In this document: piece after piece, positions 17,422 to 51,945 of the stretch
Numbering within the stretch: position 1 is the first letter of the stretch
Layout: every line of letters starts with the position of its first letter
Virus record (IMG/VR): IMGVR_UViG_3300050120_000230
Coordinates: 62,001 to 126,000 of that record
Strand: one strand, 5' to 3'
Length of the DNA stretch: 64,000 nt
Position numbers and translations under genes: made by a program
The notes under the pieces: generated by a model
What the model was told of the DNA's origin: nothing
Database searches by the model: none
Seen by the model: only the letters and a program-made list of their open reading frames with translations

Positions 17422-17500
17422 AATCTCTTAATGAAAAATGACAGCAACAGATCATGGTTAATGCCATGACCCTTAAAATAAGCACCTGAAATTGGTGCCG

Positions 17501-17539
17501 GTAGACAACCCCGAGGCCGTAATTGACCTCGGGGTCTAC
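17501..17539. terminator. hairpin downstream of clpA
   Basis: GTAGAC-AA-CCCCGAGG...CCTCGGGGTCTAC inverted repeat; no clear U-tract. Confidence 0.45.
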
Positions 17540-17551
17540 ATAGCAGTTCTG

Positions 17552-19816
17552 TTAGCTGCTGACCACGATTTTTTGGTCAACCACATCGATTTTCGCGACA
17601 CCAGAGACCTTCAGGTTCCCGGTCACCATGAGCCGAGAGAGCGGCTTCTTGATGTTGTCGTTGATGACGCGTTTCAGCGGGCGGGCGCCCATCTCTTCGT
17701 CGAAACCATTGGCGGCGAGCCATTCCCGAGCTTCCGACGACACGTCGAGGGTGACGTTGCGATGGCCGGTCATCTCGGCGAGTTGCCCGATGAACTTGTC
17801 CACGATCAGGAGGATGTGCTCACGCTTCAGACGGTCGAACTTCACGATGGCGTCGAGGCGGTTACGGAACTCCGGCGAGAACATGCGCTTGATGACCGGT
17901 TCGTCGGCATCCACGCTCTTCTGGGCTCCGAAGCCGATCTTGTTGCGAGCCAGTTCGGCCGCCCCGGCGTTGGAAGTCATGATGAGGATGACATTGCGGA
18001 ACGAAACCGTCTTGCCAGTGGACGAAGTCAGCTTCCCGTCGTCCATCACCTGAAGCAGGATATTGAACACGTCCGGGTGAGCCTTCTCGATCTCATCCAG
18101 CAGAAGGATGGAGTGCGGGTTGGTGTCCACGTCGTTGACCAGCTTGCCACCGCCAGCGTCGCCTTCACCGTAGCCGACGTAGCCCGGAGGCGCCCCGATC
18201 AGCTTGGCGACCGAATGCTTCTCCATGTATTCCGACATGTCATACTTGAGCAGCGGGATGCCGAGCGTTTCCGCAAGCGTTCGGGCGGCTTCCGTCTTAC
18301 CCACGCCGGTCGGGCCGGTGAACAGATAAGCGCCGGACGGGAGATTGGGCTCGCGCAGACCCGCGCGGGAAACGAACACCGCGTCAGTAAGCGCCGTCAG
18401 CGCCGAGTCTTGACCGATGACCTTCACCTTGAGATCGTCTTCGAGACGAGTGAGCTTTTCGGTCTCGTCTTCGGCAACTTCCCGAGCCGGGATGTGAGCG
18501 ACCTTGGCCACTTCCACTTCGATCTCGGCGACTTCGATGACCGTCTTGCGTTGATCGGCCGGGAGAATGCTTTGGCGGGCGCCCGCGTTGTCGATCACGT
18601 CAATCGCCTTGTCCGGCAATTGAGCGTTCGTCACGTAGCGCGTCGTCAGGTCCACCGCCGCGTCCAAAGCTTCATCCGTATAGGTGACGCCATGGAACGC
18701 TTCGTAGTTGCCCTTCAGGCCGCGCAGGATCAGCTTAGCGTCATCGGGCGACGGTTCATTGATGTCCACCTTCTTGAAGCGGCGCTTCAGAGCGCCGTCT
18801 TTTTCGAAGTGCTTGCGGTATTCTTCCTGTGTGGTCGAACCCATGCAGCGCAGGGTGCCCTTGGCCAGCGCGGGCTTCAGAAGGTTCGCCACGTCCAACG
18901 AACCTTGGCTACCGGAGCCAGCACCCATGACGGTGTGGATTTCGTCGATGAACAGAATGGCGCCGGGGATCATCTCGACAGCCTTGATGACTTGCTTCAT
19001 CCGCTCTTCGAAGTCGCCTCGGAAGCGAGTGCCTGCCACGAGGCTGCCGATGTCGAGCGAGAACACCTTGGACTCGGCGACCACGTCCGGCACTTCCTTG
19101 CGAACGATCTTGAGCGCCAGACCTTCGGCCAGCGCGGTCTTACCGACACCGGGTTCACCAACGAGGATCACGTTGTTCTTGGTGCGGCGGGCGATGATCT
19201 GAATGATCGTCATGATCTCGTCGGCGCGGCCGATCAGCGGATCGATCTTGGCGTCAGCGGCCTGCTTGTTCAAGTTCGGGGCGTATTGTTCGAGGAAAGC
19301 TTCTGCTTCCTCCGGCGTGCCCATCGGCACTTGTTGCTGCGGGCTATCGGCTCCGGCGTTTTCCCGCCGGTCAGCGCGCTTCGAGCCGTGAGAGAAATGT
19401 TTCTTCACCGCCAGCGGACTGACACCCATCTTCAGAAGAAGCGTAACCGCGAAATTGTCTTCGTGGGGCATTTCCAGCAGATGCAGGAACAGGTCTTGCG
19501 GGGTGGCCTTACCACGACCGGACATCGCCGCATAACCGACTGCGCGCGTGATGACTTCATCGAGACTTGCTGTGGGGCGCGGCTGGGTGAAGGTGATGGG
19601 ATAGGCGTCCGTGTCGAGATGCGCGCTGATCTCTTCGAGAACTTCCACCGCATCGACGTTCAGGGCGGCCAGTGTCGCGACCACTTCGACTCGCTCAAGA
19701 AGCGAAGCGAGAAGGTGTTCCATGGTCACATATTCGTGGCCCTTGAGACCGGCAAGCGCCTGTGCCCGGTAGATGGTTTCGACTGTGTTGTCATCGGGTC
19801 CGAGTTCATTCGACAT
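17552..19816 (-). CDS. clpA: ATP-dependent Clp protease ATP-binding subunit ClpA
   Basis: N-domain ([10 protein letters not shown]), two Walker A motifs ([16 protein letters not shown]), IGF ClpP-docking loop, no ClpB middle domain, GARPL. Confidence 0.93.
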
Positions 19817-19828
19817 AAAATGCTTCTT

Positions 19829-20320
19829 TCAAATGTTTTTCGCGCGTCGTGCCTTGGCTGTCTTGAGAGACAGTGGGCCTACCAAATCCACGAAGCGGAC
19901 CCCGTTGAGGTGATCGGTTTCATGAAGGTAGCAGCGGGCTGCGAGATTTTCAAACTTTTCGTTTACGAGATTTCCCGACGAATTCGTGAACTGAGCTTCG
20001 ATGGAAACCGGGCGGGCAATTTTCAGCCACAGGTCGGGGAAACTGAGGCAGCCCTCAAGGTCGCGATCTTTCTTGGTGGAGATCGACACCACCGTGGGAT
20101 TGAAACACGCGCGAGGTTGGCCATCCGTGTCCATGACGAACATGCGATAGAGCAGCCCGACTTGCGGTGCGGCCAATCCCACTCCCCGGTTCGAGAACAT
20201 CATCTCGAACATATCCGCCACCAAAGCTGATGGATCGGTCGGGGGCTTGGAAAAATCGAAAATAGGGGCGACGAGACTAAGGATTGGATCGTCCTCGTCC
20301 ACCAAGCGAAGCTGACTCAT
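19829..20320 (-). CDS. def: peptide deformylase
   Basis: GVGLAAPQ, EGCLS, HETDHLNG. Confidence 0.95.
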   Translation of the reverse strand: MSQLRLVDEDDPILSLVAPIFDFSKPPTDPSALVADMFEMMFSNRGVGLAAPQVGLLYRMFVMDTDGQPRACFNPTVVSISTKKDRDLEGCLSFPDLWLKIARPVSIEAQFTNSSGNLVNEKFENLAARCYLHETDHLNGVRFVDLVGPLSLKTAKARRAKNI

Positions 20321-20432
20321 TTCACCTTTCAAGACTGGCCGGGGCCAATCATGATCGAACTCACCTTACCGACTACCCGATCACGCACTCGGCCACTGAA
20401 AATCTCGTATACCAAATAGATAATACGGACAA

Positions 20433-21260
20433 TCAGTTTTGCAAGCTCTTAATTTCGCGGAGAAGTTCGATTTGGCGTTCGTTCACCAGTGAGGGAACTG
20501 TGACGCTTATTGTGACGATATGATCCCCACGCACGTCGCTGCCGATGACCGGCATCCCCCGGCCGGAAATCCTGATCTGGTGGCCGGTCTGGACACCCGG
20601 AGACGCTTCCACTTCGATCTCATCGCCGTCGATGGTCAACACTTTGAGCTTGATGCCAAGCATGGCGTCGATGGCGTTGATCGAAACGTCGGAGAACAGA
20701 TACTTGCCGTCGCGGCCGAACGGAAGGTCCGGGCGGATCGAAATGGTCACGAAGAGATCACCGGGCGGCGTGCCAGCGTGCACGTTCTCGCCAGCACCAG
20801 CCACGCGGATGCGCGTCCCGTTATCAACGCCTGCCGGAATCTTCAGACGGATTTCTCGATCCAGCAGCTTGAGGTTCACTTCGCAGCCACGGAACGCGTC
20901 GATGAATCCGATAGCGCAGTGCGAGGTGTAGTGACGGTTCGTCGTTTGCTGGCGGCGCTGCATCTCACGGATCATCGCTTCGATGTCCGGCGGCGCCCCT
21001 CCAAAACCAAAATGGAACTCATGGGCGCCATTTTGCTGACGGTGGCCAAAATCATGAGTAGGATTTCTCAGCGCGGCACGTTTTTCTGCGGTGTTGACCG
21101 CATTGTAGGCCGAGTTGATTTCTTTGAAACGACCTTCAGCACTAGGGTCACCGGCGTTGGCATCGGGGTGATGCTTCTTCGCTAGAGTTCGGAATGCAGA
21201 TTTGATTTGATCGTCGTTAGCATCCTGTGCAACGCCGAGGACGCTATAGGGATCGTTCAT
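20433..21260 (-). CDS. dnaJ: DnaJ-family co-chaperone without Zn finger
   Basis: J-domain with HPD; C-terminal KIPAGVDNG and PGDLFV; no CxxCxGxG repeats. Confidence 0.9.
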   Translation of the reverse strand: MNDPYSVLGVAQDANDDQIKSAFRTLAKKHHPDANAGDPSAEGRFKEINSAYNAVNTAEKRAALRNPTHDFGHRQQNGAHEFHFGFGGAPPDIEAMIREMQRRQQTTNRHYTSHCAIGFIDAFRGCEVNLKLLDREIRLKIPAGVDNGTRIRVAGAGENVHAGTPPGDLFVTISIRPDLPFGRDGKYLFSDVSINAIDAMLGIKLKVLTIDGDEIEVEASPGVQTGHQIRISGRGMPVIGSDVRGDHIVTISVTVPSLVNERQIELLREIKSLQN

Positions 21261-21649
21261 TTTGCTTTTGGCAAAGCCTTTGCTTCTTCTTGGAGGCGGC
21301 TGGGATCATTCACAACTCCCGTAAGGAAGTCGATGATTGCCTTCTGCTGCTTGATGTAAGTCTTAACATCAACCAGATTCCCAGACAATTTCTTAAAATT
21401 GGCCTCATCAAGGGTGAACAGAGTCACATTACCGCCATTCGCCTGAAGACTGGCGCCTAGAGCTTTCAACTCGTCAGCGTTATAGACCTTCCACTCGACA
21501 GACTGTGGCACCACGGGGTCGGCCTTGGGCACATCGATATGCGGGACAATGGAGACAGGCTGAATAACGACACGCGGCGGGGGTGCCGTGGCACATGCGG
21601 CAAGGCTCGCCGCCAGTGCGACGATCATCAAAAAACGAGGCGTTCTCAT
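21257..21649 (-). CDS. probable outer-membrane spanin (lipoprotein)
   Basis: signal peptide with LAAC lipobox, Pro-rich linker, coiled-coil; overlaps the i-spanin-like gene. Confidence 0.65.
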   Translation of the reverse strand: MRTPRFLMIVALAASLAACATAPPPRVVIQPVSIVPHIDVPKADPVVPQSVEWKVYNADELKALGASLQANGGNVTLFTLDEANFKKLSGNLVDVKTYIKQQKAIIDFLTGVVNDPSRLQEEAKALPKAK

Positions 21650-22062
21650 TTGGTGATCTCCTGAATCTCAGCAAAGATGCCGTTGGTGGTGTCGTTCGCC
21701 CACTTCTCGACGGCTTCGGGGTGGGCTACGGCGATTGTGTCCGCATCGTAGTTGTTGATCGCTTGGTGCTGCACTACACCGGTCTGACGGATATCGGCGA
21801 TCTGTGCATTTGTCGCAGCTTCGGCCGCTGCAACCCGCTTCGCCTCGTCATCCTTTGCCGCATTCAGCGCCGCGACGGTATCGGCATTGGCTTCAGATCG
21901 CCCGGCGGTGTGCGCGTCCGAGATTTCCTTCGCGATATGGGCCTCATACGCTTGGTATGCTTTGTAGGCGCCGAACAGCAGGCTGATGACGGCAAAACCG
22001 ATGCCGATCTTCAGACCCCAACTCTTGAAACCACCCTTAACTCGATCAAAGAAACTACTCAT
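21646..22062 (-). CDS. probable inner-membrane spanin
   Basis: N-terminal TM helix followed by Ala-rich coiled coil; GGAGG RBS; TAAATA at 22087-22092. Confidence 0.65.
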   Translation of the reverse strand: MSSFFDRVKGGFKSWGLKIGIGFAVISLLFGAYKAYQAYEAHIAKEISDAHTAGRSEANADTVAALNAAKDDEAKRVAAAEAATNAQIADIRQTGVVQHQAINNYDADTIAVAHPEAVEKWANDTTNGIFAEIQEITK

Positions 22063-22181
22063 GTCAGACCTCCGAGCAGAATCCAGTATTTAGTTATGGT
22101 AATCGTCGTATTTAATCGTTGACGAAACACAAATCGGAGATACCCTGAAATTCTCTTTCACTTTCAACGAGGAGGCTCAGA

Positions 22182-25579: not shown

Positions 25580-27505
25580 ATGCCTTCCGTTGACAGCAGC
25601 CGCGTTAAGACTACCGGAACCGGTGCAATTACCTATGCCGATCAAAACTCGGCCAATTCTGCCGCCGATGCGGCTGCCGCCGATATCGCACCGGATCAGG
25701 TGATTGTCCGCTCTGTTCAGGGCGACAACATCGGCGACGGAGAAGGCATTTTCGCGGGGTCGAACGGCTCCGATAGCGTCATGCTGCAATTCAAGTCGCT
25801 CCAAGCTGGCGACGGAATCAACATTGCGGACGACGGCTTCACGATCACCATCACGAACACCGCCAACAGCGGCGGTGGTGGCGGGGGCGGCGGTGGTCCG
25901 TCTGACGGATACCATCTCACGCTCGGCAATGCGGTCACCGAAGGCGACGGTTCTTGGAGCGGCGGCGCCGTGGCTCTGACCGACAGCACGTCGGTTTCGA
26001 ACGCGGTCGATAAGATCAACACGCTTCTGGGTCTCCTTGTCCCGGCTGGCCCAACCGCTTTCCCCGGCGGCTCGCTGGCTGTCATCAATACGGTCGGTAA
26101 CAACCCTGTTTTGGCGCTCAGCGCCGCAGATCACGCAAACTCCGGTATCTCGGCGGGCTCTTCCGTTACCCGTATCGTCACCTCTTCGGTGTCGAGCAAC
26201 GTCTTCAACGACGTGGGTCCGGGTGAAAGCGGAACGATCACCCTGCTCATCAACAATGCTTCGGCTGCGGCACATACGCTGAACGGCACCAGCGACAACG
26301 GCACTTACAGTGGCCTCGTCATCGCTGACCAAAAAGCGTTCCCTGTTTCTCAGCCGGGTTTCTGGAAATCCATCGACGTGTCCGTTGCGGGCGCGGGTGT
26401 GGCGCCGGGCGTCAACAAAATGAAACTGAGCCACAGCGGCGCGGGCACGACCAATGAAGTCGTGTTTGTGCGCGATGACATGGTCTCCACTCCGACGATC
26501 AGTCCGAGCAGCGTCACGGAATCGTCCAACGGCGCCGTGGCTTTCTCTTCCGGTGTTCCGCACTACGGTGCGAATGCAAACCTGCTGGTCGGGCTCTCGT
26601 TCACGAACCTGTCTGGTGAAACCTACTACGGCGGCACCGATGTCCTCACGGTCTCGGGCACCAACGGCGTGCTGGCCGATCAGACTTTCAGCTATGCAAA
26701 CCTCGGCATCAACACCCCGGTCACCCACCAGATCACTTCGGCTACGGCCGTCACCCCGGTCATCGTTCCGGTCAACGGCACGACCCACGGCTCTGGCCTG
26801 ATCCAAGGCACGATCAAGAATGTGAATGGCGCCAGCGGCGTTACTTCACTTTCCTCTTCCATCGTGTTGGTCAAGCGCGGCGCGGCTGCGAGCAACAAGG
26901 TTGACGAACTTAGCATTCCGGTTGCGGGCCTTGGCTCCGCACCGAACAACAACAATGCAATCCGTGTGAACATCGGGGCGACCGGCGATGAACCGACTGG
27001 TTCGGTTACCTCGTGGGATGCGACGGCTACTCTCCCGACCTACGAAGCGGCGGTTGTCGCGGGCATTCTGTCGAACAATCAGACGAACTATCTGACTGGC
27101 TTCCTACCGGTTGGCCCGAACCTTTCGACTGGCCGTAACGGCGCGCAATACGCCACGTTCAGCTTCCAACGTTCGGCTGTCTCCACGTTCAAGATCAACG
27201 TGACCGGCACCTACCACGGTGTCTGGATCAAGCTGCCGGGCGTCTCGGACAACGGCACGATCTCGCCCAACGCCACCAACGGCTGGTGGGATGCGACCAA
27301 GTCCTACAACGGCGCGGGCGTCCCCGGTAACGCCAGCGACCCTTCAGCGGGTTGCGCGGTCGGCTCGGTCATGGCGGGAGCAAGCGGAGCTTACTCGATT
27401 ACGTTTGGTCCCCAAACCTCCACTAACTCGAACTCGAATACGATCCTCGTTCGCATTCGTCTGGACGCTGGTCAGAGCATCACTGCTCTCAGCTTCAGCA
27501 ATTAA
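25580..27505 (+). CDS. virion structural / fibre-associated protein
   Basis: G/S/T/N-rich, TAAATA at 25550-25555, paralog of 47925..49754. Confidence 0.75.
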   Translation: MPSVDSSRVKTTGTGAITYADQNSANSAADAAAADIAPDQVIVRSVQGDNIGDGEGIFAGSNGSDSVMLQFKSLQAGDGINIADDGFTITITNTANSGGGGGGGGGPSDGYHLTLGNAVTEGDGSWSGGAVALTDSTSVSNAVDKINTLLGLLVPAGPTAFPGGSLAVINTVGNNPVLALSAADHANSGISAGSSVTRIVTSSVSSNVFNDVGPGESGTITLLINNASAAAHTLNGTSDNGTYSGLVIADQKAFPVSQPGFWKSIDVSVAGAGVAPGVNKMKLSHSGAGTTNEVVFVRDDMVSTPTISPSSVTESSNGAVAFSSGVPHYGANANLLVGLSFTNLSGETYYGGTDVLTVSGTNGVLADQTFSYANLGINTPVTHQITSATAVTPVIVPVNGTTHGSGLIQGTIKNVNGASGVTSLSSSIVLVKRGAAASNKVDELSIPVAGLGSAPNNNNAIRVNIGATGDEPTGSVTSWDATATLPTYEAAVVAGILSNNQTNYLTGFLPVGPNLSTGRNGAQYATFSFQRSAVSTFKINVTGTYHGVWIKLPGVSDNGTISPNATNGWWDATKSYNGAGVPGNASDPSAGCAVGSVMAGASGAYSITFGPQTSTNSNSNTILVRIRLDAGQSITALSFSN

Positions 27506-37068: not shown

Positions 37069-37135
37069 TTGAACACCCGAAGGCGAAACATCACCATGCC
37101 AATCAACGACGATCTTGTCAACGCATAAATAATGG

Positions 37136-47924: not shown

Positions 47925-49754
47925 TTAGTTCGTGAAGCTGAGAGCAGTGATCGACTGACCGGCATTCAAACGAATGCGGACGAGGATTTGATTGCCCGTT
48001 GCGGAGGTTGAAGAAGCGGTGCCGAAAGTCATCTGGAAGGTGCCCGAAGAACCGTTCATCACGGCGCCAGAAGCGCAACCAGCGGTCAATTCGCCAGCAC
48101 CACCGGGAACGCCAGCGCCCGCGTAGGCGACAAAGGCGTTCCACCATGCACCACCAACTGCGTTCGGCGAGACGCCGGAGTTGTCGGAGACGCCCGGCAG
48201 GCCGATCCACACACCGGCGTAGGTGCCGGTGACGGTGATCTTGAACTGCGAGAGCGCGGTGCGGTTGAAGGAGAACGTCACATACTGTGCAGCGTCTTGA
48301 CCCGAGAGGTTCGGACCAGCGGGCAGAAAGCCCGTGCTGTAGTTGGTCGTGTCGTTCTTGAGGGCGCCGCCGACGACCGTTGCATCCCAAGTGTGGATGG
48401 AAGCCGATTGGACCCAAGTGTTGGCTGCGAGGACCGGAGTGTTGCCCGTAGCTTGGCCGACGCGAACCGCGTTGCTGTTGCTCGGAGAAGAACCCAGACC
48501 AGTGACCGGGACGCTGAGTTCGTCAACGCGAGTGGTCGTGCCGTTCTTGACCAGAATGACGGAGGACGGAGAGGCAGTGCCACCCTGACCGTTGACGTTC
48601 GTGCCAGCCAGCGAAATCGTGCCCGAGTTGTGCACGTTCGAGGGGTTGACGCTGAGAGTCACCGTGGACATCGCCGTGGCCGTCGTGGTGTTTGCCGCGA
48701 TGGGGGTGGAGATACCGACGTTGGCGTAGGTGAAGGTCTGCGTCGAAAGGATCGAGTTGGTTGCACCAATCGACAACGGCGAACCGTTGAAGTAGGTTTG
48801 ACCAGCGAGGTTCGAAATCGAACCACCGACCGTCAGGGTAGCGCCCGTGTTGTAGTGCGGGACGCTCGACGAGAAGGCGACGGTGCCGTTCGAGAGTTGG
48901 GCCACAGTCGGCGACGTGATCGCCGGAGTTGCGACCAAGTTGTCACGAACGAACGTGACGAGGTTCGTAGAACCAGCGGCCGTATCGGTGATCTTGGCGT
49001 TGTTGACGCCGAGTTGCGTTGCCGCGCCAGAAACCGAGACGTTGACCGATTTCCAGAAGCCCGGAGTAGCGACCGGATAATCTGCTTGGCCGGAGATAAC
49101 GAGGCCGCCGTAGGTGCCGTTGTCTGCGATACCCGTCAGGGTGTGTGAACCAACCGAAGAGTTGTTGACCAGCAGCGAAAGCGTGCCGCTTTCACCCGGA
49201 CCCATGTTCGTGAACGAGTTCGAGCTTGCGAGTGTCGTTGATGTGATACGCGTGACGGCCGTACCGGCAGTGGTGCCGGTGCTGGCGTTGTCTTGCGCGC
49301 CGGAAGCCAAAACAGGCGAAGAACCAACCGAAGCGACGGTCAGTGCGTTTGCGTTCGGGAAGTTCGGCGGGGCGTTCGGGACGAGCTTGCCGAGGATTTC
49401 GTTGAGTTGGTCAACTGCTTCGGAAACCACGGTGCTGTTGGTCAGCGGGACCGCACCGGGGGACCAAGAACCGTCGCCGTAAGCAACGATGTCGCCAAGA
49501 ATAAGGTGGAAACCATCTGCAACGCCTGCGTTTGAGATGGAGTTGCTCAGGCTCGAATCGAGCGCGTTAAGCTGCGAAAGGGTAACAACGTCGGTATTCG
49601 CGACGGCGGCTGCCGCGCGAATAGTGGTCAACGAGATACCATCGGCACTCCGCGCCTCGACAACCGATCCATTCACCTTAAGACGAGGACCAGCCTTGCC
49701 AAGTTGAAGATCGGGGCCAACGCCCGAAAGTCCGAAGTTTTTTGTGTCTGCCAT
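47925..49754 (-). CDS. virion structural protein (mosaic paralog of 33473 and 25580 ORFs)
   Basis: MA..KNFG..GVG...Q.GK.G N-terminus; body ends ILVRIRLNAGQSITALSFTN; TAAATA at 49787-49792. Confidence 0.75.
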   Translation of the reverse strand: MADTKNFGLSGVGPDLQLGKAGPRLKVNGSVVEARSADGISLTTIRAAAAVANTDVVTLSQLNALDSSLSNSISNAGVADGFHLILGDIVAYGDGSWSPGAVPLTNSTVVSEAVDQLNEILGKLVPNAPPNFPNANALTVASVGSSPVLASGAQDNASTGTTAGTAVTRITSTTLASSNSFTNMGPGESGTLSLLVNNSSVGSHTLTGIADNGTYGGLVISGQADYPVATPGFWKSVNVSVSGAATQLGVNNAKITDTAAGSTNLVTFVRDNLVATPAITSPTVAQLSNGTVAFSSSVPHYNTGATLTVGGSISNLAGQTYFNGSPLSIGATNSILSTQTFTYANVGISTPIAANTTTATAMSTVTLSVNPSNVHNSGTISLAGTNVNGQGGTASPSSVILVKNGTTTRVDELSVPVTGLGSSPSNSNAVRVGQATGNTPVLAANTWVQSASIHTWDATVVGGALKNDTTNYSTGFLPAGPNLSGQDAAQYVTFSFNRTALSQFKITVTGTYAGVWIGLPGVSDNSGVSPNAVGGAWWNAFVAYAGAGVPGGAGELTAGCASGAVMNGSSGTFQMTFGTASSTSATGNQILVRIRLNAGQSITALSFTN

Positions 49755-49908: not shown

Positions 49909-50172
49909 GGGTAATAAGGACACCATCTCTGCCCTCAAAGGAGTTACGCGGCGAGCGCGTAGTCCATGCTAACGTTGTCGTTGGCATTTAGAAATGTGAA
50001 CTGATTGGCGGTCGTTTCTTACCGGGATTCTCGCAAACCTTTTACCGTCGCCAATCGAAAGCTGTTCGCCCCCGCACTTCCCGGTGACAACGCCGGAGAA
50101 AGATTGGTGGAGGCGCGGGGATTCGCACCCCGGTCTTGCCGACTTATTCTGATGTGGTCATCAAATCCAAGG
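49900..50172 (-). ncRNA. ssrA: circularly permuted (two-piece) tmRNA
   Basis: acceptor piece ends CGCCTCC-ACCA at 50105; coding piece starts GGGGGCG at 50073 (G3-U70 Ala identity); tag ANDNVSMDYALAA-stop at 49985-49944; outer ends approximate. Confidence 0.95.
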
Positions 50173-50188
50173 CTATTTAGCGATTTTT

Positions 50189-50428
50189 CTAGGGATAAGT
50201 CAAGCGATCTTCATCGCGGATGTGTGGATGTTTTTCCAACTCCACCAGAAGTTCGAAGATTTGTAGAACGACAAGCAGGCCATCCTTTGATCCGTCGTCG
50301 TATTGCCATTTCTTGTAGATGATCTCGCGCAGCGGATTGAGTATTTTCGCCGAAGCGTTAAGGCGGTGAAATTCGGCCTCGTCCTTGAACCCGTGACGTT
50401 GGACCATTTCTTCAATTCGATTTCTCAT
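50189..50428 (-). CDS. hypothetical protein
   Basis: start overlaps the serS stop. Confidence 0.55.
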
Positions 50429-51945
50429 AGTTTCTTCTTCTTAAAGATTTCGACCAGTCCATCGACGAAATCTTCCAAACGCCCTTCGTCAGAATACCCG
50501 CCGCACATGTTCGGCCCGTCAATCGCGTAGATCGCTTTCGCTTCCGGCGGATTCAGTTCGACCCGTTCCTCAATGCCAGCCGCTTCAAGCTTCGCGTTGA
50601 GGCGTTCGATGAATGCGTTCCGCTCGGCCGCCTCATCACCGCCAATGAGCCATCGGTCATCTCGATTCGCCGTTGGGCTGTTCATATAAGGACGAAGCGC
50701 CTCGGGGATGAGAATTGAGCCATCTTCCCGTTGGTAGGTTTCAAGGATAGCCACCAGCGCGCGCCCGACGGCCACGCCAGACCCGTTGAAGGTGTGGATG
50801 AACTTAGTGCCTTTGGTTTCCCCAGCCGGGCGATAGCGAGCGTTCATGCGGCGAGCTTGGAAATCGCCGCAGTAGGAAATGCTCGAAATCTCGCGGAAGG
50901 CATTCTGGCCGGGTAGCCACACTTCGATGTCGTAGGTTTTGGAGGCCGAGAACCCCATGTCCCCGACCGACAGAAGCATGACGCGATAGTGCAACCCCAG
51001 CGCCTTCAGCATGTGCTCGACACTGCCGAGCATTCGCTCGTGTTCCATTTCGTGAAGAGCCACTTCCTCGGACACGAGTGAGACGAGTTCGACCTTGTTG
51101 AACTGATGCTGCCGGATCATCCCTCGCGTGTCGCGCCCGGCCGAACCCGCTTCCGCACGGAAGCAGGGCGTCAGGGCACAATAGCGCCCGAGTTCACCCC
51201 AGTGTAGCACGCTGTCGCGCACCATGTTCGTCAGGGACACTTCCGCCGTTGGGATCAGATAGCGGCCGTCCGTTGTCTTGAAGAGGTCTTCTTCGAACTT
51301 GGGAAGCTGCCCGGTGCCGAACATCGACTCTTCGCGGACCAACAGCGGCGGCGCCACTTCGGTGTATCCGTTATTTTCCGTGTGGAAATCGAGCATGAAT
51401 TGCCCGAGCGCACGTTCTAGCCGGGCCATTTTCCCTTTCAGGAAAACGAAGCGCGCGCCAGACACCTTGGCTCCGGTCTCGAAATCCATGCCGAGGGGTT
51501 CACCGAGATCGAAGTGTTCTTTCGGTGTGAAAGAAAACGACGGTTTCACACCTTCACGGCGAATCTCAATGTTGTGATCCGCGTCGGGTCCGAGTGGCAC
51601 GCCCTTCATTGGCAAGTTCGGCAGGCGAGACAGATGGTGCATCACGACTCGATGGTCTTCTTCTACCTGCGGGGTGAGTTTTTCGATGTCGGCTTTGACG
51701 GTGACCATCTCGGCCTTCAACGCCTCCACGATCTCCATGGCGGCCTTGTCGCGCATCAACTGCCCGATCTCACCGGAGATCGCATTGCGACGCTGCTGAG
51801 CCTTCTCAAGAGCCTGTAGACCGTTCCTGTGCCGGGCATCCGCCATCAGCAACAGCTTGATGAGCGTTGGGCTTTCCAAGCGATAGTGCAGGCGGGAAAT
51901 AACCTCGCCTTGATTCTCGCGGATATAATTCAGGTCAAGCATCAA
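50425..51945 (-). CDS. serS: seryl-tRNA synthetase with C-terminal extension
   Basis: N-terminal coiled-coil arm, [49 protein letters not shown]. Confidence 0.95.

What the first reader, a model, noticed from the sequence alone, without database searches (positions are those of the whole stretch)
17552..22092. Spanin-DnaJ-deformylase-ClpA string: a phage proteostasis module that pairs logically with the tmRNA
Seen: TAAATA, i-spanin, o-spanin, dnaJ (ATGA-coupled to the o-spanin), def and clpA are co-directional. ClpA keeps the IGF loop and no clpP or clpS is in the window. Known: ClpAP degrades ssrA-tagged proteins, and deformylation is the first step in N-terminal processing. Inference: with serS and ssrA, the phage encodes much of a translation quality-control pathway and may redirect host ClpP and DnaK during late infection.
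Basis: partly seen in the sequence, partly recalled or inferred. Interest (0 to 1): 0.65.

Follow-up and report, generated by a model that had tools for sequence, protein, structure and literature searches.

The report
Jumbo-phage spanin–DnaJ–deformylase–ClpA operon
A giant phage of an Agrobacterium/Sinorhizobium-phage lineage carries one probable operon with two lysis proteins, a DnaJ-like co-chaperone, a peptide deformylase and a ClpA unfoldase; its DnaJ-ClpA core recurs in many large phages, and because this phage also encodes ClpP, ClpS and ClpX it does not need the host's protease.

Summary
Window 17552-22092 (minus strand) holds, in order:
- a CTAAATA promoter-like element;
- a T4-type i-spanin/o-spanin pair;
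- a zinc-finger-less (class B) DnaJ;
- a peptide deformylase with all three catalytic motifs;
- a full-length ClpA whose IGF sits at the E. coli IGL position;
- three conserved hairpins after the clpA stop.

Both ATGA overlaps are real.

The window is part of a 415-kb phage record. Elsewhere, that record encodes ClpP (catalytic triad intact), ClpS and ClpX, so "redirecting host ClpP" is unnecessary. No Hsp70, GrpE or SmpB was found, so use of host DnaK remains a reasonable inference.

- Among 78 viral contigs with a related DnaJ, 67 have ClpA directly downstream (22 clusters below 70% ClpA identity). Def lies between them in about a third.
- In 72 bacterial ClpA loci the upstream neighbour is ClpS (45) and never DnaJ or Def.
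- In 8 large phage genomes with the pair: ClpS 8/8, ClpP 7/8, ClpX 6/8, Hsp70 0/8, tmRNA 4/8.

The genes are already annotated in Atu_ph07, AP-J-162, Phosso and PA5oct. This is a new member of a known kind, plus a modestly new synteny observation.

The parts
22087..22114 (-). Two TAAATA copies upstream of the i-spanin: distal at 22114-22109, proximal CTAAATA at 22093-22087, ending 24 nt before the ATG. Candidate phage promoter (-10-like element).
   Evidence: Read. Genome-wide enrichment 19-fold with a sense bias. The proximal copy is conserved in L012; the distal copy is not.
21646..22062 (-). i-spanin candidate, 138 aa, with an N-terminal transmembrane helix followed by a charged helical region.
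   Evidence: phrog_739 'Rz-like spanin', E 2.4e-4, over the full profile. Homologues sit at the same place in Phosso and Atu_ph07. Atlas gives only weak leads, to DUF2570, DUF2514 and Rz. ATGA overlap with the next gene.
21257..21649 (-). o-spanin, 130 aa, an outer-membrane lipoprotein of the T4 PseT.2 type. Lipobox LAAC; Ala at +2.
   Evidence: phrog_812, E 1.1e-12. Atlas feature score 0.96 to PF26831 Phage_T4_Spanin clusters and TM 0.55-0.60 to 'spanin outer lipoprotein subunit'. L16, A17 and C19 are invariant in three phages.
20433..21260 (-). Class B (CbpA / Thermus DnaJ2-like) J-domain co-chaperone, 275 aa. It has a J domain with HPD and a DnaJ C-terminal domain, and no zinc finger.
   Evidence: PF00226 6.7e-21 and PF01556 2.4e-33, with no DnaJ_CXXCXGXG hit. 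One-piece alignment to T. thermophilus DnaJ2 (6psi, 4j80) and 3lz8. H31, P32 and D33 invariant. ATGA overlap with the o-spanin.
19829..20332 (-). Peptide deformylase, 167 aa from the TTG start; probably 163 aa from the ATG at 20320.
   Evidence: PF01327 6e-36; phrog_2890 2.5e-34. Motifs GVGLAAPQ, EGCLS and HETDH are in the translation and aligned to 1lme. Start context.
17552..19816 (-). ClpA unfoldase, 754 aa: N-domain, D1 and D2 AAA+ modules, IGF ClpP-docking loop, no M-domain.
   Evidence: TIGR02639 7e-266; phrog_4871 1.4e-262. End-to-end alignment with E. coli ClpA, with IGF at the IGL position. Motifs conserved in 68 phage homologues.
17449..17539 (-). Three consecutive hairpins after the clpA stop. 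The middle one (17499-17481) is followed by a U-tract. Candidate terminator cluster marking the 3' end of the unit.
   Evidence: Terminator-like hit. MFE -48.1 kcal/mol, z -5.36, 0 of 200 shuffles as good. The same three hairpins occur in L012, z -5.54. The alignment is 85% identical.
49944..50181 (-). Permuted (two-piece, alpha-type) tmRNA with tag reading frame ANDNVSMDYALAA. It lies 28 kb from the string.
   Evidence: RF04321 123 bits; RF01849 83 bits. ARAGORN missed it.
50425..51945 (-). Seryl-tRNA synthetase, 506 aa, next to the tmRNA.
   Evidence: PF02403 1.3e-18 and PF00587 4.6e-31.

Best explanation
The region is one probable transcription unit of a jumbo myovirus-type phage. The record holds 415 kb and is about 72% complete. 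Its nearest named relatives are Sinorhizobium phage Phosso and Agrobacterium phage Atu_ph07.

A phage-specific [A/C]TAAATA promoter-like element drives five genes: a T4-type two-component spanin, a zinc-finger-less class B J-domain co-chaperone, an active-looking peptide deformylase and a canonical ClpA. Three hairpins then end the unit.

The core of the unit is the dnaJ-(def)-clpA block. This is an old, vertically kept feature of a broad lineage of large phages, in which dnaJ has taken the place that clpS holds next to clpA in bacteria.

Proposed mechanism (inferred):
- ClpA assembles with the phage's own ClpP and is tuned by the phage's own ClpS, giving a phage-encoded ClpAPS N-degron/unfolding protease alongside a phage ClpXP.
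- The J-protein, having no phage Hsp70, recruits host DnaK to phage clients.
- The deformylase adds deformylation capacity for bulk phage protein synthesis.
- The spanins act at lysis and share the unit because of timing, not because they take part in proteostasis.

Shown: gene identities, motifs, overlaps, synteny, co-occurrence. Inferred: co-transcription, timing, partners, substrates.
For: Gene identities and motifs.

Unit boundaries:
- Promoter-like motif only at the head, conserved in L012.
- ATGA overlaps and a 12-nt def-clpA gap.
- Conserved hairpin cluster after clpA.

Phage's own partners:
- ClpP, 260 bits, with the triad aligned to E. coli.
- ClpS with NDDYTP and His kept.
- ClpX above the NCBIfam cut-off.
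- ClpA N-domain with ClpS in the complex test: weak support, score 0.52 against a best control of 0.00. Runs agree in at least 73% of contacts and partner pLDDT is at least 83. That mark was reached by 51 of 78 solved pairs and 2 of 108 mismatches, but passes at 0.60 or below are more often wrong than right unless the guess was likely beforehand.

Conservation:
- The same string occurs in Phosso; Atu_ph07 has it without def; PA5oct has DnaJ-ClpA.
- 67 of 78 IMG/VR loci have ClpA directly after DnaJ, 21 of them with Def between.
- These make 22 clusters below 70% ClpA identity, with [I/L]GF in 66 of 68.
- Of 72 bacterial loci, ClpS is upstream in 45 and DnaJ or Def in 0.
- Phage and bacterial ClpA are split by one branch, SH-aLRT 100.

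Co-occurrence in 8 genomes: ClpS 8, ClpP 7, ClpX 6, Hsp70 0.
Against: - No expression data.
- The 100-112 nt dnaJ-def gap could hide an internal start or stop. In L012 a 162-aa ORF sits there.
- TAAATA also precedes the DNA polymerase, so it may not be a late-only signal.
- ClpA scores below NCBIfam's equivalog cut-off (884 against 993 bits).
- The ClpS-ClpA prediction is only 'weak support' and may reflect memory of solved E. coli complexes.
- One complete relative (G002, 338 kb) has ClpA and ClpS but no ClpP or ClpX, so ClpP-independent action or use of host ClpP exists in the lineage.
- The record is about 72% complete, so absences (Hsp70, GrpE, SmpB, MetAP, GroES) are provisional.
Confidence: 0.6

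Rival explanations
1. Phage ClpA docks on host ClpP and, with serS and the phage tmRNA, forms a translation quality-control pathway that degrades phage-tagged proteins late in infection.
For: - IGF loop present.
- The tmRNA tag ends in YALAA, a canonical Clp degron.
- No ClpP in the window.
- A complete relative (G002) has ClpA, ClpS and tmRNA but no ClpP or ClpX, so host ClpP use is plausible there.
Against: - This phage encodes its own ClpP, ClpS and ClpX.
- tmRNA co-occurs with DnaJ-ClpA in only 4 of 8 genomes, against 8 of 8 for ClpS.
- From established knowledge, ClpXP is the main ssrA protease and ClpS blocks ClpAP action on ssrA tags.
- No SmpB in the record.
- The tmRNA lies 28 kb away in another gene cluster.
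Confidence: 0.15
2. ClpA and the J-protein act mainly as ClpP-independent assembly chaperones or unfoldases for virion or other phage proteins, as proposed for jumbo-phage AAA+ proteins (PMC7824862). Proteolysis is secondary.
For: - In CBB and Vibrio phage 2.275.O, ClpA sits alone among structural genes. In PA5oct, DnaJ-ClpA lies between virion proteins.
- Here it shares a unit with lysis genes.
- G002 lacks ClpP.
- From established knowledge, E. coli ClpA alone remodels P1 RepA, as DnaK and DnaJ do.
Against: - The ClpP-docking tripeptide is kept in 66 of 68 homologues.
- ClpP is present in 7 of 8 genomes and ClpS in 8 of 8.
- The ClpP triad is intact.
Confidence: 0.2
3. The gene order is inherited synteny without functional coupling. 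The five genes merely share a position and perhaps a promoter.
For: - Def is patchy: 16 of 44 representatives, with at least 6 changes on the ClpA tree.
- L012 has an extra ORF in the block.
- Some phages have ClpA without DnaJ, and 11 of 78 DnaJ loci lack ClpA.
Against: - DnaJ-ClpA adjacency with gaps of 6-150 nt persists down to about 41% ClpA identity across 22 clusters, while the flanks vary.
- Def, when present, always lies in the same slot.
- The cellular partner gene clpS has been displaced in every phage case.
Confidence: 0.2
4. The two small proteins are not spanins. They are some other membrane protein/lipoprotein pair that works with the chaperones.
For: - The i-spanin evidence is weak: phrog_739 at E 2.4e-4, no tblastn hit, Atlas scores below 0.9 for named families.
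- No endolysin or holin is adjacent.
- The lipoprotein stays linked to DnaJ-ClpA in many lineages: 35 of 76 loci, against 0 of 62 downstream of ClpA.
Against: - The o-spanin matches the T4 spanin family by profile, language-model features and predicted fold.
- The lipobox is invariant and has no Asp at +2.
- The i-then-o order with overlap is the classical separated or overlapped architecture.
- From established knowledge, T4 itself keeps its spanins away from e and t.
Confidence: 0.1

Closest known systems
Sinorhizobium phage Phosso (PV764938), genes 191-195; also Sinorhizobium phage AP-J-162, gp154 and gp155 (PMC11242549)
   Same: Identical order: small membrane protein, small lipoprotein, DnaJ-like, peptide deformylase, Clp ATPase. 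ClpA is 52.5% identical. Phosso also has ClpP, ClpS, ClpX and a permuted tmRNA.
   Different: Only 21-53% amino-acid identity and no nucleotide match. In Phosso the two small genes are annotated as hypothetical, not as spanins.
Agrobacterium phage Atu_ph07, gp292 ClpA and gp293 DnaJ (MF403008; PMC6102473)
   Same: Two small genes, DnaJ, then ClpA in the same order. ClpA is 49.9% identical. The published annotation lists ClpA, ClpX, ClpP, ClpS and DnaJ.
   Different: No deformylase anywhere in the genome and no tmRNA. It additionally has ClpB. The paper found no spanins and did not discuss the DnaJ-ClpA linkage.
Pseudomonas phage PA5oct, gp297 (DnaJ) and gp298 (ClpA), MK797984
   Same: DnaJ lies directly upstream of ClpA. 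The genome also has ClpS, ClpP and ClpX.
   Different: ClpA is 45.5% identical. The J-protein is shorter (229 aa). There is no Def and no spanin pair upstream, and the pair is flanked by virion proteins.
Bacterial clpS-clpA operon and the ClpAPS N-degron protease (E. coli 1ksf, 6w1z, 1mbx)
   Same: Domain order, Walker motifs, pore loops, IGL/IGF loop, ClpS N-degron pocket residues and ClpP triad.
   Different: In bacteria clpS sits directly upstream of clpA (45 of 72 loci), never dnaJ or def. In this phage clpS is about 315 kb away and dnaJ-def holds that position.
T4 spanins PseT.3/PseT.2 (Pfam PF26831 Phage_T4_Spanin)
   Same: The o-spanin matches this family by features and fold. It is a two-gene i-then-o arrangement detached from the endolysin and holin.
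   Different: Here the pair is translationally coupled to a chaperone gene. The i-spanin is very diverged.
Phage peptide deformylases (cyanophage S-SSM7 PDF, PDB 3uwa; phrog_2890)
   Same: Same family and motifs.
   Different: It is about 163-167 aa and aligns to residue 162 of bacterial PDFs of 170-171 aa, so the C-terminal segment is present. The cyanophage enzyme is shorter (154 aa). The genomic context, between dnaJ and clpA, is different.

Membership tests
ClpA (class I Hsp100 unfoldase coupled to ClpP) | Two AAA+ modules with Walker A/B and pore loops (KYR-type in D1, GYVG in D2) | tested here: met
   [41 protein letters not shown] and GYVGYG are present and conserved in 68 phage homologues. 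Pfam AAA_2, AAA and AAA_lid_9 hits.
ClpA (class I Hsp100 unfoldase coupled to ClpP) | ClpP-docking IG[L/F] tripeptide in D2 | tested here: met
   KIGFG aligns to E. coli SIGLI. Among 68 phage homologues: IGF 60, LGF 6, MGI 2.
ClpA (class I Hsp100 unfoldase coupled to ClpP) | No ClpB/ClpC-type middle domain; ClpA length and one-piece alignment | tested here: met
   754 aa. One stretch, residues 20-742, aligns to residues 15-732 of 1ksf. ClpB and ClpC match only in two pieces.
ClpA (class I Hsp100 unfoldase coupled to ClpP) | Score above NCBIfam's equivalog cut-off (TIGR02639, 993 bits) | tested here: not met
   884 bits over positions 7-733 of 734. ClpA is the best family and coverage is full, but the protein is too diverged for the trusted cut-off. 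I therefore treat it as a diverged phage branch of ClpA; the tree splits it from 15 bacterial ClpA.
ClpA (class I Hsp100 unfoldase coupled to ClpP) | N-domain that binds ClpS | tested here: inconclusive
   Clp_N hit at residues 18-67. Complex test of ClpA 1-150 with phage ClpS gave weak support: 0.52 against a best control of 0.00, at least 73% contact agreement, partner pLDDT at least 83.
Class B J-domain protein (CbpA / T. thermophilus DnaJ2 type) | J domain with the HPD tripeptide | tested here: met
   PF00226 6.7e-21. H31, P32 and D33 invariant in three phages.
Class B J-domain protein (CbpA / T. thermophilus DnaJ2 type) | DnaJ C-terminal substrate-binding domains without the CxxCxGxG zinc finger | tested here: met
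   PF01556 2.4e-33 and no zinc-finger family. One-piece match to the 280-aa DnaJ2 (6psi, 4j80) and to 3lz8. Class A DnaJ matches in two pieces with a gap.
Class B J-domain protein (CbpA / T. thermophilus DnaJ2 type) | Stimulates the ATPase of an Hsp70 partner | not testable with these tools
   No Hsp70 in this record or in 7 related genomes, so the partner would be host DnaK. This is an inference.
Peptide deformylase | Motifs G-x-G-x-A-A-x-Q, E-G-C-x-S and H-E-x-x-H (metal ligands and catalytic Glu) | tested here: met
   GVGLAAPQ, EGCLS and HETDH in the translation, aligned to 1lme. PF01327 at 123.8 bits against a 22.8 cut-off. NCBIfam subfamily 117.6 bits against 125, just under the cut-off.
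Two-component spanin (T4 PseT.3/PseT.2 type) | o-spanin: lipobox Cys, no Asp at +2, family match | tested here: met
   LAAC-AT. L16, A17 and C19 invariant. phrog_812 1.1e-12. PF26831 clusters at 0.96 and fold TM 0.55-0.60.
Two-component spanin (T4 PseT.3/PseT.2 type) | i-spanin: N-terminal transmembrane helix, helical periplasmic domain, family match | tested here: inconclusive
   A hydrophobic stretch near residues 17-35 and a charged remainder. phrog_739 only at E 2.4e-4. No tblastn hit. Named Atlas families all below 0.9.
Two-component spanin (T4 PseT.3/PseT.2 type) | Disrupts the outer membrane at lysis | not testable with these tools
   Needs complementation or deletion in a cultured phage.
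T4-type late promoter | TATAAATA -10-like element, no -35 element, read by a gp55-type sigma | tested here: inconclusive
   The consensus here is [A/C]TAAATA; exact TATAAATA occurs only 3 times. It is strongly enriched upstream of genes. It fronts the tail sheath but also the DNA polymerase. gp55/gp33 homologues were not searched.
trans-translation plus Clp degradation pathway | tmRNA whose tag ends in a Clp degron, with SmpB | tested here: inconclusive
   Tag ANDNVSMDYALAA. No SmpB in the 72%-complete record. tmRNA present in 4 of 8 DnaJ-ClpA genomes.

The most novel reading that the evidence does not exclude
The class B J-protein may be a dedicated partner of phage ClpA. This would explain why dnaJ has replaced clpS as the gene fused to clpA across at least 22 diverged lineages of large phages. 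On this reading it delivers clients to ClpA, or bridges host DnaK to ClpA, creating a phage-specific Hsp70-Hsp100 bi-chaperone/protease without the M-domain that normally mediates this coupling in ClpB. The co-inserted deformylase would tie the machine to nascent phage proteins.
Probability: 0.15. Interest if true: 0.7.

Novelty: new member of a known kind. Interest (0 to 1): 0.4.

Why it matters
The finding corrects a tempting story. This phage is not stealing host ClpP: it carries a complete Clp toolkit (ClpA, ClpX, ClpP, ClpS) split over two loci, and lacks only the Hsp70 that its J-protein needs.

The comparative result is the useful part. DnaJ-(Def)-ClpA is a conserved block in many large phages, opposite to the bacterial clpS-clpA arrangement, with ClpS always present elsewhere in the genome. 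This gives a concrete, testable hypothesis about how jumbo phages organise protein quality control. Cultured models exist in which to test it (Phosso, Atu_ph07, PA5oct).

The work also supplies spanin candidates for a phage group where none had been found (PMC6102473), and a genome-wide promoter-like motif.

Tried and rejected
- Megablast of the region against INPHARED phages found no match.
- The search for related loci with the single DnaJ protein found nothing. It worked only with the three-phage alignment A1.
- ARAGORN found no tRNA or tmRNA in the window. The permuted tmRNA was found only by Rfam.
- tblastn of the i-spanin against phages found no match. The o-spanin hit only 'hypothetical proteins' in Atu_ph07 and pelagiphage HTVC008M.
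- Complex prediction was busy once, then ran. The result is only 'weak support', and I report it as such.
- A simple longest-ORF gene call was misled by a 912-aa antisense shadow ORF over clpA and def. It was replaced by a self-trained codon-usage call.
- The PA5oct transcriptome paper (PMC7318152) does not mention gp297 or gp298, and its promoter motifs (TATAATA and TTGAC) differ from TAAATA.
- The idea that TAAATA marks only late genes was dropped, because it also fronts the DNA polymerase and a methyltransferase.
- The dnaJ-def gap has no significant structure (z -1.96) and no promoter or terminator hit on the coding strand.
- The large protein searches (search for homologous proteins, the search of protein representatives) were not used, because the family scans left no protein of the string open.
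- No alternative genetic code was used.

Full report
**What is there**

The window is bases 62001-126000 of a 415,409-bp IMG/VR virus record that CheckV rates about 72% complete. Between 22062 and 17552 on the minus strand lie five tightly packed ORFs.

A self-trained codon-usage gene call keeps exactly these five. It rejects a 912-aa antisense shadow ORF that a naive longest-ORF call had preferred.

Profile scans give these identities:
- ClpA: TIGR02639 7e-266; phrog_4871 1e-262.
- Peptide deformylase: PF01327 6e-36.
- A DnaJ-type protein with a J domain and a DnaJ_C domain.
- Two small proteins matching PHROG families annotated 'Rz-like spanin': phrog_812 at 1e-12 and phrog_739 at 2e-4.

Both junctions, i-spanin/o-spanin and o-spanin/dnaJ, read AAATGA, so the stop and start codons overlap. 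def and clpA are 12 nt apart. dnaJ and def are 100-112 nt apart, depending on the def start.

**The proteins**

*ClpA.* It aligns in one piece with E. coli ClpA (residues 20-742 against 15-732, E 2.8e-210). The Walker motifs, the pore loops and the ClpP-docking loop are in place; KIGFG lies opposite SIGLI. ClpB and ClpC match only in two pieces, so there is no middle domain.

*The J-protein.* It carries HPD. It aligns in one piece with the zinc-finger-less T. thermophilus DnaJ2 and with 3lz8, but in two pieces with class A DnaJ. It is therefore a class B, CbpA-like co-chaperone rather than DnaJ proper.

*The deformylase.* It has GVGLAAPQ, EGCLS and HETDH.

*The 130-aa protein.* It has a lipobox, LAAC, followed by Ala-Thr, and the lipobox is invariant in the Phosso and Atu_ph07 homologues. 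The ESM Atlas places it with clusters carrying PF26831 Phage_T4_Spanin (score 0.96). Its model resembles a 'spanin outer lipoprotein subunit' (TM 0.55-0.60).

*The 138-aa protein.* It has an N-terminal hydrophobic helix and a charged remainder. Its family evidence is weak. I accept the pair as a T4-type spanin, with the o-spanin well supported and the i-spanin supported mainly by position and topology.

**The transcription unit**

TAAATA is a real signal in this genome.
- It is the most enriched hexamer in the intergenic DNA upstream of genes: 63 sense copies against 3.3 expected, and 25 antisense. 100 of the 140 genomic copies are intergenic. The consensus is [A/C]TAAATA.
- Two copies precede the i-spanin. 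The proximal CTAAATA ends 24 nt before the ATG and is conserved in the closest relative L012; the distal one is not.
- No copy lies inside the string.

After the clpA stop there are three strong hairpins. The middle one is followed by a U-tract. Together they fold far better than shuffles (z -5.4, 0 of 200), and they are kept in L012 (z -5.5).

This anatomy fits one unit running from 22092 to about 17449, but no expression data could be obtained.

'Late' is not established. The motif fronts the tail sheath and tail-fibre-like genes, but also the DNA polymerase and a DNA methyltransferase.

**What the rest of the genome says**

The record itself encodes all of these:
- ClpP at 406476-407075 (261 bits). 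It aligns to E. coli ClpP with Ser, His and Asp kept.
- ClpS at 398623-398919, with the NDDYTP pocket and His kept.
- ClpX at 393844-395163, with its zinc finger (539 bits, above NCBIfam's cut-off).

No Hsp70, GrpE, SmpB, methionine aminopeptidase or GroES was found. The record is incomplete, so these absences are provisional.

A complex prediction of the ClpA N-domain with phage ClpS gave weak support. The score was 0.52 against a best control of 0.00, with at least 73% contact agreement and partner pLDDT of at least 83. The mark was reached by 51 of 78 solved pairs and 2 of 108 mismatches, but passes at or below 0.60 are often wrong unless the guess was likely beforehand, and similar complexes have been solved.

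**Relatives**

There is no nucleotide match in the phage collection. By protein, the nearest named phages are Sinorhizobium phage Phosso (ClpA 52.5%) and Agrobacterium phage Atu_ph07 (49.9%).
- Phosso has the same five genes in the same order.
- Atu_ph07 has the same order without def and has no def anywhere.
- PA5oct has DnaJ directly before ClpA.
- CBB and Vibrio phage 2.275.O have ClpA alone among structural genes.

With an alignment of the three J-proteins I fetched 80 IMG/VR loci, out of 370 relatives.
- Of the 78 with room downstream, 67 have ClpA directly after DnaJ on the same strand. 21 of those have Def between.
- The ClpA proteins fall into 22 clusters below 70% identity and keep [I/L]GF in 66 of 68.
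- A lipobox ORF lies within 1.6 kb upstream in 35 of 76 loci. The controls were 12 of 76 on the antisense strand and 0 of 62 downstream of ClpA.

In contrast, 72 bacterial ClpA loci have ClpS directly upstream in 45 and never DnaJ or Def.

On a quick maximum-likelihood tree, 44 phage and 15 bacterial ClpA are separated by a single branch (SH-aLRT 100). The bacterial sample is small and biased, and the tree is unrooted. Def presence needs at least 6 changes on that tree, so it is an accessory that always uses the same slot.

**Co-occurrence**

I compared eight genomes that carry DnaJ-ClpA: this one, Phosso, Atu_ph07, PA5oct and four IMG/VR records of 230-561 kb.

| Feature | Present in |
|---|---|
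| ClpS | 8 of 8 |
| ClpP | 7 of 8 |
| ClpX | 6 of 8 |
| Hsp70 | 0 of 8 |
| Permuted tmRNA | 4 of 8 |
| Standard tmRNA | 0 of 8 |

The complete 338-kb record G002 has ClpA, ClpS and tmRNA but neither ClpP nor ClpX.

**tmRNA**

The window does hold a permuted tmRNA next to serS. Its tag reads ANDNVSMDYALAA. The degron is canonical. However, from established knowledge such tags go mainly to ClpXP, and ClpS inhibits their degradation by ClpAP. Together with the 4-of-8 co-occurrence, the claimed special pairing of this string with the tmRNA is weak.

**Literature**

- The Atu_ph07 paper lists ClpA (gp292), DnaJ (gp293), ClpX, ClpP, ClpS and ClpB. It notes that ClpA is conserved in Rak2-like phages and reports no spanins (PMC6102473).
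- AP-J-162 has a deformylase (gp154), DnaJ (gp155), six Clp proteins and a tmRNA (PMC11242549).
- Iyer et al. note sporadic DnaJ, ClpA/ClpX, ClpP and ClpS in jumbo phages and propose host Hsp70 recruitment and assembly roles (PMC7824862).
- None of the papers I read describes the DnaJ-(Def)-ClpA linkage or its contrast with clpS-clpA.

**Verdict**

The thing itself is a new member of an already annotated gene set of Atu_ph07-like jumbo phages.

The best-supported mechanism is a phage-encoded ClpAPS/ClpXP system, a J-protein that must borrow host DnaK, and extra deformylase capacity. These are expressed from one unit together with the spanins.

The modestly new points are:
- the breadth and tightness of the DnaJ-ClpA linkage;
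- the displacement of clpS from its bacterial position next to clpA;
- the spanin assignment;
- the promoter-like motif.

Noticed in passing
Whole record G000; examples in the window at 37126 (+), 9117 (-), 42770 (-): The distance from the end of TAAATA to the start codon is bimodal. About 30 genes have it 3-6 nt before the start codon and about 27 have it 20-38 nt before. If the motif is a -10-like element, the first class would give leaderless or nearly leaderless mRNAs.
   Followed up: partly
G000:C1:405484-406461 (L005:10484-11461, +), outside the window: A 325-aa AAA+ ATPase of the classical (Cdc48/proteasomal) type ends 15 nt before clpP. It could be a further unfoldase partner of the phage ClpP.
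   Followed up: no
G000:C1:393844-407075, outside the window: ClpX, ClpS and ClpP lie within 13 kb of one another. The same order and spacing recur in a 561-kb IMG/VR record (215.3, 218.7 and 223.4 kb) and in PA5oct (169.8, 172.7 and 180.4 kb). This is a second conserved Clp neighbourhood, separate from DnaJ-ClpA.
   Followed up: partly
window 17492-20230 (+): A 912-aa open frame runs antisense to clpA and def. It is rejected by codon usage and is a shadow ORF that could mislead automatic annotation.
   Followed up: yes
window 49944-50181 (-) and 50425-51945 (-): A permuted alpha-type tmRNA with tag ANDNVSMDYALAA lies next to a seryl-tRNA synthetase. ARAGORN did not detect it. No SmpB is present in the record.
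   Followed up: partly
window 25580-27505 (+) and 47925-49754 (-): Two paralogous proteins of the unknown-function family phrog_8578 (E 6e-199 and 4e-182). Each has TAAATA 30-38 nt upstream.
   Followed up: no
L012:3155-3643 (+): The closest relative (ClpA 83% identical) has an extra 162-aa ORF between dnaJ and def, where the window has only about 100 nt.
   Followed up: no
IMG/VR record behind L018 (G002, 338,435 bp, direct terminal repeats, 100% complete): This record has DnaJ-ClpA, ClpS and a permuted tmRNA but no ClpP and no ClpX. It is a natural case in which a phage ClpA with an IGF loop would have to use host ClpP or act alone.
   Followed up: partly
Whole record G000, upstream regions: GTTGAC and TTGACG are enriched about 5-fold and 3-fold upstream of genes. 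They may be the -35 elements of host-type (early) promoters.
   Followed up: no
G000:C1:408254-410655 (L005:13254-15655, +), outside the window: A T4 Rnl1-like RNA ligase and a protein with a GatB/YqeY domain follow the clpP region. They are further RNA/translation-related genes.
   Followed up: no
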